Notes under the pieces: model-generated
Databases searched by the model: none
What the model saw: the letters and a program-made list of their open reading frames with translations, nothing else
Told to the model about the DNA's origin: nothing
Made by a program: the position numbers and the translations under genes
From: Vitrella brassicaformis CCMP3155
Taxonomy: Eukaryota; Protista; Chromerida
Assembly (NCBI GenBank): GCA_001179505.1
Contig: CDMY01000444.1
Span: forward strand, 11,636-75,635
DNA length: 64,000 nucleotides
Reading direction: 5' to 3'
Part shown: positions 57,221-63,794 of the stretch, one piece after another
Numbering within the stretch: the stretch's first letter is position 1
How the letters are laid out: each line of letters starts with the position of its first letter

Positions 57221-57838
57221 CACACAGGAGAGCGTTGCGTGGCGTGTGTGTATGTGTGTGACTGCATGGGCTGGTGGCTCAGGTGCTCTCCATTCCACCC
57301 CTCTGTGCGTACCTTGCTCGTTCGTTAGTTGGGTGTAGTTGCTGCCTCCAGCAGCCCGACGACACGGTTTCCTTACCAATGCCCCTGCAAACCCACCTGC
57401 CACACACCGAGGCACAGCACCACAGGTGAGAGCATCAACGCCACGCCCAAAGGGCTGACTCCCCTCCCTCCTAACACACACCGCCCCGCCCTCCCTGACT
57501 GACCCCTCTCACACCCTCCTCACTCTCATGCAGTCGACAGAACGGCCTTTCTCTCCCGCTGCCCAGCGATGCATTCCGCACCCACTGGCTGCAGCCCATC
57601 CCTACCGCCTCTCTCAGCCTCCCTGAGGCCCTGTGCGACGGCCCTCACCTTGTGTGCGTGCAGGTGGTTCTCTTGCAGGGGTGGGAGGTGGAGAGCCGAT
57701 GCACCTGGCCGACGGAGGGCTCTCCGGTGGCTTCAGAACCGAGCTGGAGTGGGCTGCGGAGGCCGGGGAATATCCTCCAGGCCCTTCAGAGTTTAGGAGA
57801 TTCGTGAAACCGATCAGTCCCTCCGGCTAAGCTCGCGC

Positions 57839-58841
57839 ATGGCGACAGCGATGAAGAGGGCTGCACTCAGCTGGAGAATGGCAACCACCTCTGCTGCAGC
57901 TGCAGCTGCTGCGCCTGCTGCCGGATCTGACCAGCTGCACGATGCCGTTCATCAGATCTCATCAGTCAATGGCAATCGTGGCAATGAGCCCAATGATGAC
58001 GGTGACGGTGCCCATGGTGGTCCACAGGCAGACATGCGTGTGCTGATGCGGTCGCTCTCGGCTTGTGGATCAATGGGTGAGCTGCGGCAGATGGTGGACC
58101 GACATGGCGGCTCTCTCGATGTTCCCGCGTGTGCCATGGCTCTGCACAGGTGGGCGGACGGGTGGGCGCATCGCATCGAAGCACAAGACGCATTGCATTG
58201 CATTCATCACAAATTCGTTAACTGATTGAGTGATTGCGATGGGCCAATGTCTGTCTGTCCATGTGTTGTGTTGGTCTCTTCTCTTTGTGTGTGTGCAGGT
58301 TGGCGAGGCTGTCGCGCAAGCCACTCGAGGGCGTGAAGACCAAACCCAGATGGTCTCCCAGCGACGCTCTCTGCGACACCCTGCTCTCCCAGCTCCTCTC
58401 AGTCATCACTCGCACACCCAATGGCAACACCACCTCAATCGCCCCACGCGACGCGGCCATGGCGCTTGTGGCCATCGCGCGGCTGCACCCTGGGTGGGAG
58501 AGGGAGAGCGAGATATGGACGAGGCTGTTGGAGGGCGGCTTGATGCCGGTCAGGGCGACGGTGGGGGCAGAAGTGATAAAGGACGTTGTGTGGGCTGCGG
58601 CGAGGGCAGGGCGTGGCGACAGTGCGGTGCGGCCGTGTTTGGAGGCGCTTGTGTGTGAGGTGACGCTGGAGAGGCGCTATGTTGGTTTCCGGCCAAGGGA
58701 CCTGTTCTCTTTTCTGTGGGCGTGTGGGAGTCTGGGCATCGATTTGGGAGGCTTGGCTAGCTACACTGCCACCAACGACTACCTGCTCGCACACTTACAT
58801 GTATCTAAGGATGCAGGCAGACACACACAGAGAGGGCTCCA

Positions 58842-58872
<31 letters not shown>

Positions 58873-59575
58873 CAGGATCTCACCCCAACGGACTGTGTGC
58901 TCAGTTGCTCCGCGTGTCTCTCTCAACTGAGCCGCTCTCAGAGCTCCCAGCAGCAGGGCAGGTCGGCAGCTCGGCGAGAGATTGAGAGGGTCCTTTCAGC
59001 GATCGGCAGACACGCCATGTCGCAAGCAGACTGCGCAAACCCACACACAAGCACATGGGACGCCAAGTGCTACGCCGGTCTGTTGCGCGTGTGCGCCAAG
59101 CACCAGTACAAAGACACTCGGCTGCTCGGCCACATCTCTCGGCAGCTGCTGGGGCAGATGGACCGATGCCGTGTGCAGGACCTTGCCAAGACGGTGTGGG
59201 CGTGCGCGGCGCTGAGCTACACCAACAGGGAACTGTTTGAGGCGATTGAGCGGCAGCTGATGGGGCAGTTTCTTAGAGAGGGAGAGGGAGAGGGGGTGCG
59301 GATGAGGCCGATTGAGGTAGGAAGGCAAGGCTGGCGGCCAGTGAGAGGCCATTCCATTCCACCCCCCACACACATCACGCCATCTTATCTTCCTTGGCAG
59401 GTGTGTCATTTCATGTGGGGCTTTGCGTCGAGAGGGTATCGCTCCCCCGAGCTGTTTGATGCCCTCAGCGATGTGGCGCTCGCCGACATTAAGAACTACT
59501 CGCCGCACGACATGGCAGTAAGGGTGTAGGCCCACATCCGGCGTCGGTATCTCTCTCTTTCTCTCCCTCTCTCTC

Positions 59576-59638
<63 letters not shown>

Positions 59639-61933
59639 CGCTGTGTGGAGCTTTGCGTCGACGCAGAACCTCAAGGAAGAGCTCTTCCGGGCCATTGCCA
59701 GAGAGGCCGTCTCAAAGCTCACCAAGTTCTCCGCCCAGGTACCTAGGTAGCAGAAGGTCCTTTCATCCATCCATCCATCCCTTCCTCCATCGATGCGCTC
59801 AACACACACTCACTCAGGACCTCGCCAACACCATCTGGGCGTTCTGCCGCGCCGGATTCTACTTCGACAACCTCTTCGGCCCCCTGACCGCACACACGAT
59901 GCAGCACATGCACCGGTTCAAGCCACATGAGGTCGGTCCACAGACACCCTCGACAGAGAGAGAGAGAGAGAGAGACATGGATGTCTTGTATGTGTGTGCA
60001 GGCGGCGAGCACTGCGTGGGCTTTTGCGACCAAGAGAGAGGGGGGAGGGGGGCAGCGAGAGAGACAGGGGGAGGAGGAGGTGCTGGTGGGCTTGCGCACG
60101 GCCATCGAGCGGCAACATGGGCTCGCAGCACTCTCGTCGCAGAGCATACTCGCTGCCGGTAAGTCAGCAACAGACAATCACATTCTTGGTTCTTCTTCAC
60201 CCGTCTCAGTGTGGAGTTTCTCTGTGACGGGTTTGCTCACGCCATCGTTCCTGGATGAGTCGAGGCGGCTGCTCATCAACAGAGCAAAGGAACATGATGC
60301 TCTCGTGGCCACATCCATATCGACCTCCCCTGGTGGTGCTGTGGATTTCCGCAAGCGCAAGGGCGACCCTGGAGATGATCATGTCGGTGTTGGTGTGTCC
60401 TCTGGTAAAGTTGATATTATGGGAGGGGAGAGGGAGAGGGAGAGGGAGAGCTGTGGTGGTGGTGGTGGTGAGACGGCCATGGCGACCGAGCCTTTTGTGC
60501 TGCAGCACCATCCTGAAGTGCTGGTATGATTGCAGCTTCCGTGAAATGTCTGTATCCTCTCTCTCTCTCTCTCTGTGTGTGTGTGTTAGATATTGGGCAA
60601 GCCGCCATTCTGGAGTGTGACGACCACATGGACCCCAATGGAAGGCGACACCAACACCAACACACCAACATACTCATACCAAAGTGAGTCAGTCAGTGTG
60701 GGTGAGCTTAGCACCTATCTAGAGCACACCTGACCCACTCACACACCCCTCCATCTCTCTCTCCGTGTGTGTGTGTGCAGTGTCCGAGCGTCTGCCTGTG
60801 CAAGAGACCAGCAGCACACCTGACCCACATGATGAGGATGCAGAAACGGAAGACGAGCATGAAGAGGAGACGGAGCTTCGTTCGGTGGTGGGGTGGGTGC
60901 GAGAGCGCTATGAGCCGTCTCAGCCCATTCATGCTGACCCCGCAGTCGCGCGGGCGTTCCTCCATCGACTTGACTATGAGACCAGTGGTGCGGTTTGTGG
61001 GCATCCGTCTGTCGAGTATCTCATTGTGTCTCATTGGCTCTCTTTCTCCCTGTCGTTCAGGCCCGTTGCTGATTGCCCGCACTTATACGTCATGGGCCAA
61101 TCTGCGCATCCAGATGCAGAGCCATCAGCTGACGAAGGAGTATGTCTGTCTGGTGCATGGGAATGTCCCTATCGGCCAGCAGCAGAGAGGTGCGCTCTTG
61201 CCATGAATACACACGCAGAGAGAGAGAGAGAGATATGGAGAAGCGGCCATTGTTGATGTGCGTGTGTGTGTGTGGGTGTGCGTGTGCAGTTGATGCACGG
61301 ATCGAGACGCTGACGGACTACCCCCACACCAGCAAGACCAGCCGCGTGCACCCCAACGGCAAAGTAAGATACTCATCCACACACACACGCACACACGCGT
61401 ATATCTATCTCTCTCCCTGTCTGTGTGGGTACGTCTTCACTGCAGCCAGCAATCACTCTGTATGAGTGTGTGGGCCACTACAGGCGCAACTCCGCGCCTT
61501 TCAGCCTTCTCAAAGTCACCCTCCTCACCGGCCGCACACACCAGATTCGGTGCCACATGCAGCACATAGGCCATCCGGTGGTTGGGGACAGCAAGTACCA
61601 CTCCAGAGGGGAGAGAGAGAAAGGCGACAACGGCAAATCGAGAGGGGACGACCGAAAATGGTACGGCTGTCTGTGTGGGGCTATCATTCCATTCACGAAA
61701 GTATCGATCCATCTGTCTGTCTGTCATTGGTGTGTGCAGGTGTCCGCGAACGTTCCTGCACTGCCAGCAGCTGGGCTTCACAGACCTTCAAGTACGAACA
61801 CGTGCGAGGAATAATCAATCGCATAATTGTCTGATCCCACGATGGCATCGATCAGGGCGACGCCGTGGTGGTGAGATGGGACCTGCCCCCAGACTTGCAG
61901 GACGTCCTGAGCGTGGGCATGCAGCCGGCATGA
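57839..61933 (+). CDS. Heptatricopeptide-like helical-repeat protein fused to an RluA-family RNA pseudouridine synthase, probably organelle-targeted
   Basis: Repeats (Q/H)D(L/M)AxxxW(A/S/G)F have Trp-to-Trp spacing of exactly 37 aa over three consecutive units. They splice in frame into VLQHHPEVLILGKPPFW, HRLDYETSG (catalytic Asp at 60972-60974), KEYVCLVHG, LLTGRTHQIRCHMQHIGHPVVGDSKY, RTFLHCQQLGF and WDLPPDL*. Confidence 0.88.
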
Positions 61934-62270
61934 GACGAATGGATGGATGAGCCGGCTGCTGGTCGTTGTGTCAGGCAGGCTGACTGATTCTCATGATGGG
62001 AGTGCGTGGAAAGATTTCCAGATGGACTGACGGATGGCTGGATGGATGGGTGTGTATAGGCGGACACCGTGCCGCGTGCAGACGCAGACAGAGTGTTTAT
62101 AGTCTGTCTCCATTGTCGGTCTTTCAGACAAGCGGGAAGATGCAATCAGTTCTTTTCTCTCGATGCGACGCAGAACACGTACGGCAACAGGAAACCACCC
62201 GAACAGCCAAAATACGTGCCCAAATGACAGAGACTTGGGGCTCAAACTACTGTATCTATCATGGTATCTA

Positions 62271-63794
62271 TCAATCGATACCCAGCGGCACGAATTGATG
62301 TCTCTCATTATCCAAGTATCCCAGCTGCTCCCACCCACTGAACTCGCAGTCGTCATTGCCAAGATGCTCGTTGAAGCCCTTCTCCACACCCTCGACACCG
62401 TGCTGCGCCGCCTCGTCCAACCGGGCCCTGTGCACCACCTCCCGCACACCCAGCAGCCGATGCTGCCCACTCCCACCATTGACGGCAAAGCATTGCAGCG
62501 GCACTCGCACCGTCAGCGCGCCCACGTCGGCTAATGCACCCACCACCTCTCTGTTGCCTCTCGCCCGAGTGCTCGCCTGACTGACAAAGTGGCCGACAGC
62601 CACACGCATGCGACGCCTCAGACGCGAGTCGCCGATAAGATGCTCGTCGATCGCCGCCATAGCGGCAGAAGGCTCGTAAACAAACGCAGCGATCTTCCAG
62701 CTGATGGCCTCCGCCTCTTGTGGACCGAATGAGAGGTTGGAGGGGGATGGGCAGGGGTAGTCGCCGTCGTGATGAGGGGCGATTGGCAGCAGAGGGGTGA
62801 TGACGGATGCGAGCCACCGCTGGGGGCGAAGGGCACCGTTGATTGCCGCCATGACCACACTCGGCAGCTCGTTGAGCACTGCCGCATACTCAGCCAGCAC
62901 CAGCTGCCGTGATGGTTCGGTCAGGCTGGAGATGAGCGACAGGGATGGCGCCGCCCCGCCCCGCAGAAGCACACGTGCAGTGGTCTGGTACCGCTGGCAC
63001 CGTCGCGCGCAAAACTCTCTCATCGAGTCTCGTTGTTCATTCTGCATTAGGTGATGGTAATGCTTCAGCTGGTAGGCACTCAGGGCCAGGGCCGTGAGGG
63101 TTGCGTCGTTTGGGGCCGAGCCGTTGACGTCATCGGCACTCAAATGGCGGCACAGATAGTGGGCAACACGGTAGGAGCCGGATTGACCCGCCTTTTGCAA
63201 GGGGGTCAATCCTTCGCCTTGGAGCTCTCTTGCTGTTATGTTGGCCCCATGGTTCGCGATCAGGTCGAGATACTTGTCAATGAAGGCTTGAGAGAAGGAG
63301 AAATGCCAGAAATCGGCTGCATGATGAACCAGGTTTGGTCGCAAGGGATATCGCTGTTCTTCGGTTGCGAGCGTCGCGTCTCGTTCGACGAGCCGCCGGT
63401 AGATGAGCAGTCAAACGTCCTCATGCTGCTTGGGCAGCGGCGTGCGGTGGAGATATGGAAGCTCCATAATGAACATGCCGCGGACGTCAGGATTGCGGTC
63501 GAAGAGCACGTCACATGCAGCCACATTGCAAGCATGGACCGCCATGTGTAGAGGCCTCCTCTCCACCGGAAAGCCGGCCGCATTCAGGTCTGCCCCGCCA
63601 TCGATGAGTGTGGTAAGGACGTCTCGCTGCAGCCGAGATGAAGGCCACTGAGGAACTTTGATCCAGGCAGGACCCACGCGTGAGTTGGGGCCCCAGTAGA
63701 GTATCGTCTTGAATTTTTTTATTTCAAGGAGAGATAATTGACAGATGGCATCCATGCACTCGCTTGTCCAAATCGCCTCCATGAATCTATCCAC
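62271..63794 (-). pseudogene. Ankyrin-repeat protein (intron-poor family) interrupted by an in-frame TGA at 63411-63413
   Basis: LIDGGADLNA...RPLHMAV, LIANHGANI...GLTPLQKA, and further Ank-like segments. ORFs 63411-63794 and 62271-63344 share a frame, and the 66 nt between them translate cleanly (LLIYRRLVERDATLATEEQRYP). Confidence 0.75.

What the first reader, a model, noticed from the sequence alone, without database searches (positions are those of the whole stretch)
57839..61933. HPR helical-repeat array fused to an RluA pseudouridine synthase: a candidate sequence-programmed organellar RNA modifier
Seen in sequence: a mitochondrial-transit-like N-terminus, then about 8-10 helical repeats. 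The best four give Trp spacings of 37, 37 and 37 aa (VCHFMW, IAVW, DLANTIW, AASTAW). These splice without a stop into a complete RluA/RluD-type domain (KP motif I, HRLD catalytic Asp, TGRTHQIR, FLH). Established: 37-aa heptatricopeptide repeats are organellar RNA-binding proteins in apicomplexans and relatives, and myzozoan mitochondria have fragmented rRNAs. RluA enzymes normally find targets through their own domain or an S4 domain. Inference: the repeat tract may read RNA sequence and deliver the catalytic domain, like PPR-DYW editing factors but writing pseudouridine, possibly on rRNA fragments or the few mitochondrial mRNAs. I cannot tell whether this architecture is already catalogued.
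Basis: partly seen in the sequence, partly recalled or inferred. Interest (0 to 1): 0.88.

Follow-up and report, generated by a model that had tools for sequence, protein, structure and literature searches.

The report
Helical-repeat pseudouridine synthase fusion gene
This is one spliced 15-exon gene for a 968-residue protein that joins an organelle-type RNA-binding helical-repeat tract (HPR/FAST-like) to a complete RluC/D-like pseudouridine synthase; related fusions are common in dinoflagellates and present in Vitrella, but no paper found here describes them.

Summary
Spliced transcript contigs give 15 GT-AG exons and one open frame of 968 aa, 57839-61933 on the + strand. One 4,537-letter contig covers both halves. 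Trp424/461/498/535 are spaced 37/37/37, and lag 37 is the best self-periodicity.

The repeat tract is homologous to FAST_1/RAP (HPR-type) proteins (best E 3.6e-26). A model of part of it is all-helical and resembles RESC6 and mitoribosomal solenoid proteins. The C-terminus is an RluA-family domain nearest RluC/RluD. It keeps every family motif, including the catalytic Asp782, and has no S4 domain.

It is not unique. At least 61 fetched proteins carry 3-15 HPR repeats N-terminal to the same domain. The named ones come from Polarella, Symbiodinium, Alexandrium, Effrenium and Yihiella, and Vitrella has a homolog with a more degenerate tract. A parallel PPR-RluA fusion also exists. These are only auto-annotated database entries; six full-text searches found no description.

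Best reading: an organellar, probably mitochondrial, pseudouridine synthase whose repeat tract replaces S4 as the RNA-targeting module. This is the cis form of the human FASTKD2-RPUSD4 pairing. Sequence-programmed targeting is plausible but untested. I rate it a new variant of a known kind, interest about 0.6.

The parts
57646..57838 (+). 5' UTR covered by transcript contigs, with an in-frame stop at 57794-57796 ahead of the ATG
   Evidence: Contigs of X1 and X7 begin matching at 57646. The origin of the further upstream letters in those contigs is unresolved.
57839..58149 (+). Exon 1, aa 1-103: start codon and a presequence-like N-terminus. The first 30 aa hold 3 K/R, 0 D/E and 20 A/S/T.
58299..58800 (+). 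Exon 2, aa 104-271: degenerate helical repeats (W202 and W244 motifs)
   Evidence: The AF2 model of this piece is all-helical.
58876..59316 (+). Exon 3, aa 272-418: degenerate repeats plus the first strong HPR repeat (aa 372-400, bases 59176-59262, W379)
59401..59517 (+). Exon 4, aa 419-457: regular HPR repeat with W424
59637..59738 (+). Exon 5, aa 458-491: regular HPR repeat with W461
59818..59931 (+). Exon 6, aa 492-529: regular HPR repeat with W498
60002..60158 (+). Exon 7, aa 530-582: HPR repeat start with W535, followed by a G/E/R-rich insert
60210..60523 (+). Exon 8, aa 582-686: last degenerate repeat (W583) and a low-complexity linker. No S4 or other Pfam domain.
60590..60683 (+). Exon 9, aa 687-718: start of the RluA domain, motif I KPPFW (60599-60613)
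   Evidence: The exon is fixed by the 200-letter contig arithmetic.
60781..60987 (+). Exon 10, aa 718-787: acidic insert, then motif II HRLD (60963-60974). The catalytic Asp782 codon is 60972-60974.
61061..61189 (+). Exon 11, aa 787-830: conserved Tyr795 and KEYVCLVHG. PF00849 positions 53-84 at 20.2 bits.
61290..61363 (+). Exon 12, aa 830-854
61446..61660 (+). Exon 13, aa 855-926: motif III TGRTHQIR (61527-61550). PF00849 at 30.2 bits (cut-off 26.8) and TIGR00005 at 61.8 bits.
61740..61791 (+). Exon 14, aa 926-943: CPRTFLH motif
61856..61933 (+). Exon 15, aa 944-968, with the stop codon at 61931-61933
61934..62300 (+). 3' UTR, at least this far. Transcript contigs run on past 62300.
   Evidence: pieces 61856-62300 in X1, X6 and X7

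Best explanation
A single nuclear gene of a chromerid-like alveolate encodes a 968-aa protein with four parts:
1. A presequence-like N-terminus, which probably sends it to an organelle. The mitochondrion is the more likely destination.
2. An alpha-solenoid of about 12 helical hairpins of the HPR/FAST_1/RESC6 type. About five are regular 37-mers.
3. A flexible low-complexity linker.
4. An RluC/RluD-like pseudouridine synthase domain with all catalytic motifs and no S4 domain.

The most likely mechanism is that the repeat tract binds a single-stranded stretch of organellar RNA, such as a fragment of the fragmented rRNA or one of the few mRNAs, and holds the tethered catalytic domain near a uridine. 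Asp782 then isomerises that uridine to pseudouridine. On this reading the tract takes over the substrate-recruiting job that S4 does in bacterial RluC/RluD and that FASTKD2 is reported to assist in trans for human RPUSD4.

Shown: the gene model, one spliced mRNA, the architecture, the homology of both halves, intact catalytic motifs, and the existence of a family with the same domain order.

Inferred: organellar location, catalytic activity, RNA binding by the tract, and the claim that the tract sets site specificity.
For: One spliced transcript and one continuous ORF.

Repeat tract:
- HMMER search of aa 105-457 against 1.84 billion representatives gave 397 hits at E<=1e-3. The four top hits I scanned all carry FAST_1, and two also carry RAP.
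- Own repeats score at domain E 1e-10 to 1e-12 against the repeat profile.
- The AF2 model of the own piece is all-helical (pLDDT 76.8). Its low-confidence stretches fall roughly where the two read-through introns lie.
- Its best solved-structure matches are RESC6 and mitoribosomal solenoid proteins of Polytomella and Toxoplasma.

Catalytic domain:
- PF00849 is above its cut-off on one exon alone.
- The own C-terminus scores 212 bits (E 1.4e-64) against a family profile.
- That family profile hits RluC at 1e-34 and RluD at 1.6e-32 in the PDB.
- All nearly invariant family residues are present, including HRLD and GRxHQIR.
- No S4 was found.

Same architecture elsewhere:
- 61 fetched proteins have 3-15 HPR repeats, always N-terminal to the RluA domain.
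- Polarella has at least 8 clusters whose RluA domains are 42-54% identical and whose tracts are 29-38% identical.
- In a tree rooted on bacterial-type sequences, all 67 repeat-carrying proteins fall in one 74-tip clade and none of the 56 others carries repeats. The window protein groups with Vitrella and Chromera sequences at 0.925 support.
- The AF2 model of family member P0178 is confident as a whole (pLDDT 86.7, pTM 0.86): a solenoid plus an RluA fold.

Functional precedent: FASTKD2 assists 16S rRNA modification by RPUSD4 (review PMC12687428). HPR proteins bind organellar RNA and sit on the Toxoplasma mitoribosome (PMC6212722, PMC11652630).

N-terminus: no acidic residues in the first 30 aa and no hydrophobic core.
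Against: - No experiment bears on localisation, activity or targets.
- Pfam FAST_1 on the only own repeat piece that could be submitted is below threshold (16.7 bits against 27.4). The strongest repeats are split over exons and could not be scanned as one protein.
- Only about five repeats are regular, so a long programmable tract is not evident.
- No RNA-recognition code is known for HPR repeats.
- RluA-family enzymes can find their sites through their own domain.
- Some pseudouridine synthase homologs act as assembly factors rather than enzymes, for example T. brucei mt-LAF3, which is among the PDB hits.
- The amphipathic moment of the N-terminus is modest (0.30), so targeting is uncertain.
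- The node uniting all repeat-linked RluA domains has weak support (0.20).
Confidence: 0.55

Rival explanations
1. The protein is mainly a mitoribosome assembly factor or RNA chaperone. The RluA domain and the repeat tract hold rRNA fragments during assembly, and catalysis is dispensable or secondary.
For: The family profile also matches the T. brucei and Leishmania mitoribosome assembly-intermediate proteins annotated as pseudouridylate synthases (6yxx_EC mt-LAF3, 7aoi_XP, 7am2_BZ). HPR proteins are structural parts of the Toxoplasma mitoribosome (PMC11652630). From my own knowledge, not checked here: RluD and Chlamydomonas Maa2 have roles that do not need catalysis.
Against: Every catalytic-site motif is kept in the window protein and is invariant across 44 aligned family members. 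That argues for selection on catalysis. The match to RluC/RluD (E about 1e-33) is far stronger than the match to mt-LAF3 (E about 1e-11).
Confidence: 0.2
2. The enzyme is active, but the repeat tract is not a sequence reader. It is a general RNA or protein anchor, for example docking to the mitoribosome or an RNA granule, and the RluA domain selects the site itself as in bacterial RluA.
For: RluA recognises its sites by indirect readout through its own domain (title of PDB entry 2i82). The window tract is largely degenerate. Solved HPR-like proteins sit peripherally on mitoribosomes.
Against: Paralog expansion with diverged tracts on a more conserved catalytic domain (Polarella) and an independent PPR-RluA fusion are the pattern expected of targeting modules. 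This evidence is circumstantial.
Confidence: 0.2
3. The apparent fusion is an artefact: two neighbouring genes joined by a chimeric contig or by read-through.
For: Logan contigs can bridge neighbouring genes. In run X6 the two halves lie on separate contigs.
Against: The frame stays open across all 14 splice junctions. The 60158|60210 junction is seen in two runs. Dozens of proteins from independent transcriptomes in other genera have the same domain order and a homologous linker-to-RluA boundary.
Confidence: 0.02

Closest known systems
HPR (heptatricopeptide repeat) / FASTK-like organellar RNA-binding proteins (Hillebrand et al. 2018, PMC6212722; Pfam FAST_1, RESC6)
   Same: 37-aa helical-hairpin repeats with the consensus (core motif LANTAWAFA). 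The tract is homologous to FAST_1-carrying proteins, some with a RAP domain. It has a solenoid fold like RESC6 and the Toxoplasma mitoribosomal helical-repeat proteins. The family is expanded in myzozoans.
   Different: The C-terminal effector is an RluA-type pseudouridine synthase rather than FAST_2/RAP. The HPR surveys I read mention only FAST-kinase-like or RAP extra domains.
Bacterial RluC / RluD (RluA family, TIGR00005)
   Same: Catalytic fold and all motifs. These are the best PDB sequence matches (1xpi 1e-34, 1v9f 1.6e-32) and among the best fold matches.
   Different: No N-terminal S4 domain; a ~500-aa helical-repeat tract stands in its place. There is an acidic insert between motifs I and II. 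Scores are below every NCBIfam equivalog cut-off, so it is not an ortholog of a particular bacterial enzyme.
Human FASTKD2 - RPUSD4 mitochondrial pseudouridine synthase module
   Same: An HPR/FAST-type RNA binder working with an RluA-family synthase on mitochondrial rRNA (PMC12687428). RPUSD4 (5uba) is a detectable relative.
   Different: In humans these are two separate proteins acting in trans. Here they are one polypeptide. The window domain is nearer to RluC/D than to RPUSD4.
PPR-DYW RNA editing factors of plant organelles
   Same: The logic resembles it: an organellar helical-repeat tract fused N-terminally to an RNA-modifying catalytic domain, with paralog expansion.
   Different: No PPR motifs and no DYW deaminase. 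The chemistry is U-to-pseudouridine, not C-to-U. A repeat code is established for PPR and unknown for HPR. This is an analogy only.
Database homologs with the same architecture: Vitrella brassicaformis P0300 (1118 aa); Polarella, Symbiodinium, Alexandrium, Effrenium and Yihiella proteins
   Same: The repeat tract lies N-terminal to an RluA domain that shares the family-specific KPPxW and WCPRxFLH motifs. The window protein clusters with the Vitrella and Chromera sequences.
   Different: The window protein is only 27% identical to P0300 over aa 313-961 and 35-39% identical to dinoflagellate RluA domains. P0300's tract is degenerate: my repeat profile counts only 2 repeats in it and its FAST_1 hit is faint. 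No near-identical protein is in the 1.84-billion-representative library. The window repeats are more degenerate than those of the dinoflagellate members (5 scored repeats against a median of 10).
T. brucei mt-LAF3 (6yxx_EC), a mitoribosome LSU assembly factor of pseudouridine synthase fold
   Same: An RluA-family fold used in mitochondrial ribosome biogenesis.
   Different: A distant relative (E about 1e-11). It has no HPR tract.

Membership tests
RluA family of pseudouridine synthases (Pfam PF00849 / TIGR00005) | Match to PF00849 above the gathering score | tested here: met
   Exon 13 alone scores 30.2 bits against a cut-off of 26.8, E 6.4e-07, profile positions 116-152. Exon 11 scores 20.2 bits at positions 53-84. 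The whole spliced protein could not be submitted.
RluA family of pseudouridine synthases (Pfam PF00849 / TIGR00005) | Motif II HRLD with the catalytic Asp, and motif III GRxHQIR | tested here: met
   HRLD is at aa 779-782 and TGRTHQIR at aa 882-889. Both align to invariant family columns and to RluC.
RluA family of pseudouridine synthases (Pfam PF00849 / TIGR00005) | Equivalog-level match to a specific bacterial enzyme (RluA, RluC, RluD or TruC) | tested here: not met
   All NCBIfam scores for the own exon and for four homolog domains are far below the equivalog cut-offs. TIGR00005 scores 62-114 bits against a cut-off of 192.7.
RluC/RluD-type architecture | N-terminal S4 RNA-binding domain | tested here: not met
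   No S4 (PF01479) hit in any own exon translation or in six fusion homologs. Bacterial relatives do carry PF01479.
HPR proteins (Hillebrand et al. 2018) | Tandem 37-aa repeats | tested here: met
   W spacing is 37/37/37, lag 37 is the best periodicity and lag 74 is second. Four repeats score at domain E 7e-10 to 9e-12 against a 37-position repeat profile, and a fifth partial one at 4e-06.
HPR proteins (Hillebrand et al. 2018) | Sequence homology to recognised HPR/FAST_1 proteins | tested here: met
   phmmer with aa 105-457 gave a best E of 3.6e-26 and 77 hits at E<=1e-10. The top hits scanned carry FAST_1, and two also carry RAP.
HPR proteins (Hillebrand et al. 2018) | Direct Pfam FAST_1 match above the gathering score | tested here: inconclusive
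   16.7 bits against a cut-off of 27.4 on the one submittable piece, which lacks the three best repeats. Those repeats are split over exons 4-7 and have no single reference.
HPR proteins (Hillebrand et al. 2018) | Alpha-helical hairpin solenoid | tested here: met
   The AF2 model of the own piece has about 20 helices and no strands, pLDDT 76.8. Its best PDB matches are RESC6 and mitoribosomal solenoid proteins. Caveat: the piece contains two intron-encoded inserts, and the low-confidence stretches fall roughly at them.
HPR proteins (Hillebrand et al. 2018) | Organellar localisation and RNA binding | not testable with these tools
   Only composition of the N-terminus is available: 3 K/R, 0 D/E and 20 A/S/T in the first 30 aa, with no hydrophobic core.
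FASTK family sensu stricto (FAST_1 + FAST_2 + RAP) | C-terminal FAST_2 and RAP nuclease-like domain | tested here: not met
   No RAP or FAST_2 hit in any exon translation. The C-terminus is the RluA domain. Fusion homologs also lack RAP.
PPR-DYW editing factors | PPR motifs and a DYW deaminase domain | tested here: not met
   No PPR or DYW Pfam hit. The comparison is functional analogy only.

The most novel reading that the evidence does not exclude
HPR-RluA proteins, and the parallel PPR-RluA proteins, are a family of repeat-programmed, site-specific pseudouridine writers for myzozoan organellar RNA, the pseudouridine counterpart of PPR-DYW editing factors. Each paralog would leave a nucleotide-resolution mark next to its binding site. 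Matching the paralogs' tracts to pseudouridine maps could then yield the still unknown RNA-recognition code of HPR/FASTK repeats.
Probability: 0.35. Interest if true: 0.85.

Novelty: new variant of a known kind. Interest (0 to 1): 0.62.

Why it matters
HPR/FASTK-type repeat proteins are a large and mostly uncharacterised class of mitochondrial RNA factors in apicomplexans, dinoflagellates and humans. How they recognise RNA is unknown.

A natural fusion of such a tract to a pseudouridine synthase does three things:
1. It is a 'Rosetta stone' that independently supports the functional pairing of FASTKD2 with RPUSD4 in human mitochondria.
2. It predicts that the fragmented organellar RNAs of myzozoans carry pseudouridines placed by protein-guided enzymes.
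3. It offers a readout, a modified base, that pins down where an HPR tract binds. Editing sites gave the same handle on the PPR code.

The multi-paralog sets in dinoflagellates and the convergent PPR-RluA fusion make this testable by comparison.

Tried and rejected
- Pfam on ten single-exon translations found nothing. The exons are too short, and only longer or better-conserved pieces scored.
- The spliced 968-aa protein has no reference, so it could not go to Pfam, structure prediction or the indexed protein search. I used exon references, a stop-free read-through piece (58300-59517, which carries two in-frame introns) and sandbox HMMER on the joined sequence.
- I looked for the window's own protein in the databases and found none. 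The best hit to the repeat piece is 30% identical, and the RluA part scores at most 137 bits against any fetched protein. The gene seems unannotated or absent from the collection.
- I looked for apicomplexan members. None appeared among named hits. The lists are capped and length-filtered, so absence is not shown.
- Chromera P0390 (963 aa) is not an architectural ortholog. Its RluA domain is N-terminal with a long acidic tail and it scores no HPR repeats.
- Vitrella P0314 likewise scores no repeats.
- Six literature searches and five targeted paper reads found no description of an HPR- or PPR-pseudouridine synthase fusion. The supplements of Hillebrand 2018 are not held.
- The earlier-findings index had nothing relevant.
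- The 'two genes' reading is rejected.
- A signal-peptide or plastid-type bipartite leader is judged unlikely from hydrophobicity (maximum KD over 12 residues 1.18), but it is not excluded.
Full report
**1. What is in the sequence**

The region is part of a eukaryotic nuclear genome of about 57% GC, with short introns full of dinucleotide microsatellites. I laid the contigs of four public runs on 57400-62300.

Runs X1, X6 and X7 hold spliced contigs. Ten introns are reported directly as GT..AG joints. The other four lie at repeats the tool skipped:
- 58801-58875
- 59518-59636
- 60524-60589
- 60684-60780

These four follow exactly from the record coordinates of the contig pieces. For example, 200 record letters between 60417 and 60781 equal 106 + 94 bases of exons 8 and 9.

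Joining the 15 exons gives one open frame of 968 codons, from the ATG at 57839 to the stop at 61931-61933. All 14 introns are GT-AG and 51-149 bases long. An in-frame stop at 57794-57796 inside the transcribed 5' leader fixes the start codon.

X7 record 8 is a single 4,537-letter contig running from 57646 past 62300. It covers both halves of the protein. The junction 60158|60210, which links the repeat part to the linker, is seen in two runs.

The only correction is that intron 1 starts at 58150, so the tail of the first mechanical ORF is intronic.

**2. The repeat tract**

- Trp424, 461, 498 and 535 are spaced 37/37/37. Lag 37 is the best self-similarity lag between 20 and 79, and lag 74 is second.
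- I used the stop-free piece 58300-59517, which is aa 105-457 plus two in-frame introns, for a full HMMER scan of 1.84 billion representatives. It gave 397 proteins at E<=1e-3 and 77 at E<=1e-10, with a best E of 3.6e-26. The four top hits I scanned all carry FAST_1, mostly in several copies, and two also carry RAP. That is the HPR/FASTK-like class.
- I seeded a 37-position repeat profile with the four regular repeats and iterated it on the fetched homologs, reaching 2,768 repeats. Its consensus has the HPR core motif LANTAWAFA. It scores own repeats at aa 372-400, 416-448, 452-488 and 489-525 at domain E 7e-10 to 9e-12, the partial repeat at 526-539 at 4e-06, and five weaker partial matches.
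- Pfam FAST_1 on the submittable piece is sub-threshold (16.7 bits). That piece lacks the best repeats, which are split over exons 4-7.
- An AlphaFold2 model of the same piece is all-helical, with about 20 helices, pLDDT 76.8 and pTM 0.67. Its low-confidence stretches at residues 161-175 and 331-359 fall roughly where the two intron-encoded inserts lie.
- Its best solved-structure matches are trypanosomal RESC6 and the helical-repeat proteins of the Polytomella and Toxoplasma mitoribosomes.

**3. The catalytic domain**

- Exon 13 alone passes PF00849 (30.2 bits against a cut-off of 26.8) and scores 61.8 bits on TIGR00005.
- The joined C-terminus (aa 671-962) scores 212 bits, E 1.4e-64, against a profile of homolog domains.
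- That family profile finds RluC (1xpi, 1e-34), RluD (1v9f, 1.6e-32), RluA, human RPUSD1 and RPUSD4, and the trypanosomatid mitoribosome assembly proteins of pseudouridine synthase fold.
- All motifs are intact: KPPFW 690-694, HRLD 779-782 (catalytic Asp782, codon 60972-60974), TSG, Tyr795, TGRTHQIR 882-889 and FLH 931-933. These are invariant or nearly invariant across 44 aligned family members.
- No S4 domain is present.
- No NCBIfam equivalog cut-off is reached. It is an RluA-family enzyme nearest RluC/D, not an ortholog of one bacterial enzyme.

**4. It is a family**

Six of the 150 best repeat-tract hits also carry this RluA domain, with Pfam FAST_1 + PseudoU_synth_2. A profile search then returned many more, with precomputed FAST_1/RESC6 + PF00849. 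The named ones are:
- Polarella glacialis, at least 8 clusters
- Symbiodinium
- Alexandrium
- Effrenium
- Yihiella

Among all fetched proteins, 61 have 3-15 HPR repeats (median 10), always N-terminal to the RluA domain.

Vitrella brassicaformis P0300 (1118 aa) has a comparable layout, a degenerate helical tract followed by the RluA domain. It is 27% identical to the window protein over aa 313-961. My repeat profile counts only 2 repeats in it and its FAST_1 hit is faint. Perkinsus has a short form with a vestigial repeat.

Polarella paralogs are 42-54% identical in the RluA domain and 29-38% identical in the tract.

In a FastTree of 130 RluA domains rooted on bacterial-type sequences, all 67 repeat-carrying proteins fall in one 74-tip clade. 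None of the other 56 proteins carries repeats. The clade node itself is weak (0.20). The window protein groups with the Vitrella and Chromera sequences at 0.925 support, apart from the dinoflagellate and Perkinsus sequences. This fits an old fusion in the common ancestor of these lineages but does not prove it.

A model of family member P0178 is confident as a whole (pLDDT 86.7, pTM 0.86). It shows nine hairpins followed by an RluA fold, matching RESC6 and RluD/RluC respectively.

The ESM Atlas holds automatic clusters labelled PF00849 + RESC6 + FAST_1.

**5. Literature**

Six full-text searches and five targeted reads found no description of an HPR- or PPR-pseudouridine synthase fusion. The papers read were the founding HPR paper, a 2026 HPR survey preprint, the Toxoplasma mitoribosome paper, the Perkinsus complexome paper and a 2011 deaminase-fold paper that co-mentions PPR and a pseudouridine synthase domain. 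The HPR surveys mention only FAST-kinase-like and RAP extra domains.

A 2025 review states that FASTKD2 assists 16S rRNA modification by RPUSD4 in human mitochondria (PMC12687428). The window protein is the same pairing in one chain.

**6. Mechanism and rivals**

Most likely the protein is imported into an organelle. The N-terminus has no acidic residue in its first 30 aa, is Ala/Ser/Thr-rich and has no hydrophobic core, so it resembles a mitochondrial presequence more than a signal peptide. The solenoid would bind single-stranded organellar RNA, and the tethered S4-less catalytic domain would convert a nearby uridine.

Nothing here tests whether the tract reads sequence one repeat per base. 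The window tract has only about five regular repeats, and no HPR code is known.

Rivals:
- An assembly-factor or chaperone role, with the mt-LAF3 precedent. The conserved active site argues against this being the only role.
- A non-specific anchoring tract.
- An artefactual fusion, effectively excluded by the open frame, the junction reads and the homologs.

**7. Verdict**

The architecture is real, expressed, recurrent and undescribed in the searched literature, but it is made of two well-known modules and is already present, unremarked, in databases. I rate it a new variant of a known kind, with interest 0.62.

Noticed in passing
P0393 (Effrenium voratum, 685 aa) and an ESM Atlas cluster; not in the window: There is a parallel PPR-RluA fusion. 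P0393 has about a dozen PPR motifs followed by the same type of RluA domain. The ESM Atlas holds a 59-member cluster with PF00849 in 100% and PPR_2 in 81% of members. Helical-repeat tracts of two different kinds have therefore been joined to this enzyme.
   Followed up: partly
window 59401-60158 (exons 4-7): Each of the four regular 37-aa repeats lies on its own exon. The introns are all phase 0 and fall 3-6 residues into the repeat, just before the Trp helix. This looks like tandem exon duplication.
   Followed up: partly
window 57400-57646: Transcript contigs from two runs (X1 record 1, X7 record 8) both stop matching the genome at 57646. They carry 1,503 and 957 further letters that do not lie in 57400-57645. 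There is no AG at 57644-57645. This could be a non-canonical 5'-UTR intron, a distant exon or an assembly chimera. It is unresolved.
   Followed up: partly
window 58150-61855 (introns of the gene): At least nine of the 14 introns contain a (GT)n, (TC)n, (AG)n or (CA)n microsatellite. Three more short simple-repeat runs (GGGAGA, GAGAGG and GTG units) lie inside coding exons and encode G/E/R-rich low-complexity stretches.
   Followed up: no
window 57839-61933 compared with L001 (Vitrella contig CDMY01000346.1): The window protein has no near-identical entry among 1.84 billion representatives. The window resembles a Vitrella brassicaformis locus in GC (0.568 against 0.556) and in tetranucleotide usage (r = 0.91). 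The gene may be unannotated in the public assembly.
   Followed up: partly
window 62271-63344 (- strand): A 357-aa ORF lies on the opposite strand just downstream. By eye it has ankyrin-like motifs. The 3' UTR of the studied gene (to at least 62300) appears to overlap its end.
   Followed up: no
P0190, P0234, P0021, P0042/P0183: Other HPR/FAST_1 combinations appear in dinoflagellate or metatranscriptome proteins: an HD domain plus RluA, patatin plus RluA, a C-terminal SAP domain after RluA, and FAST_1 plus RRM. Some may be gene-model fusions.
   Followed up: no
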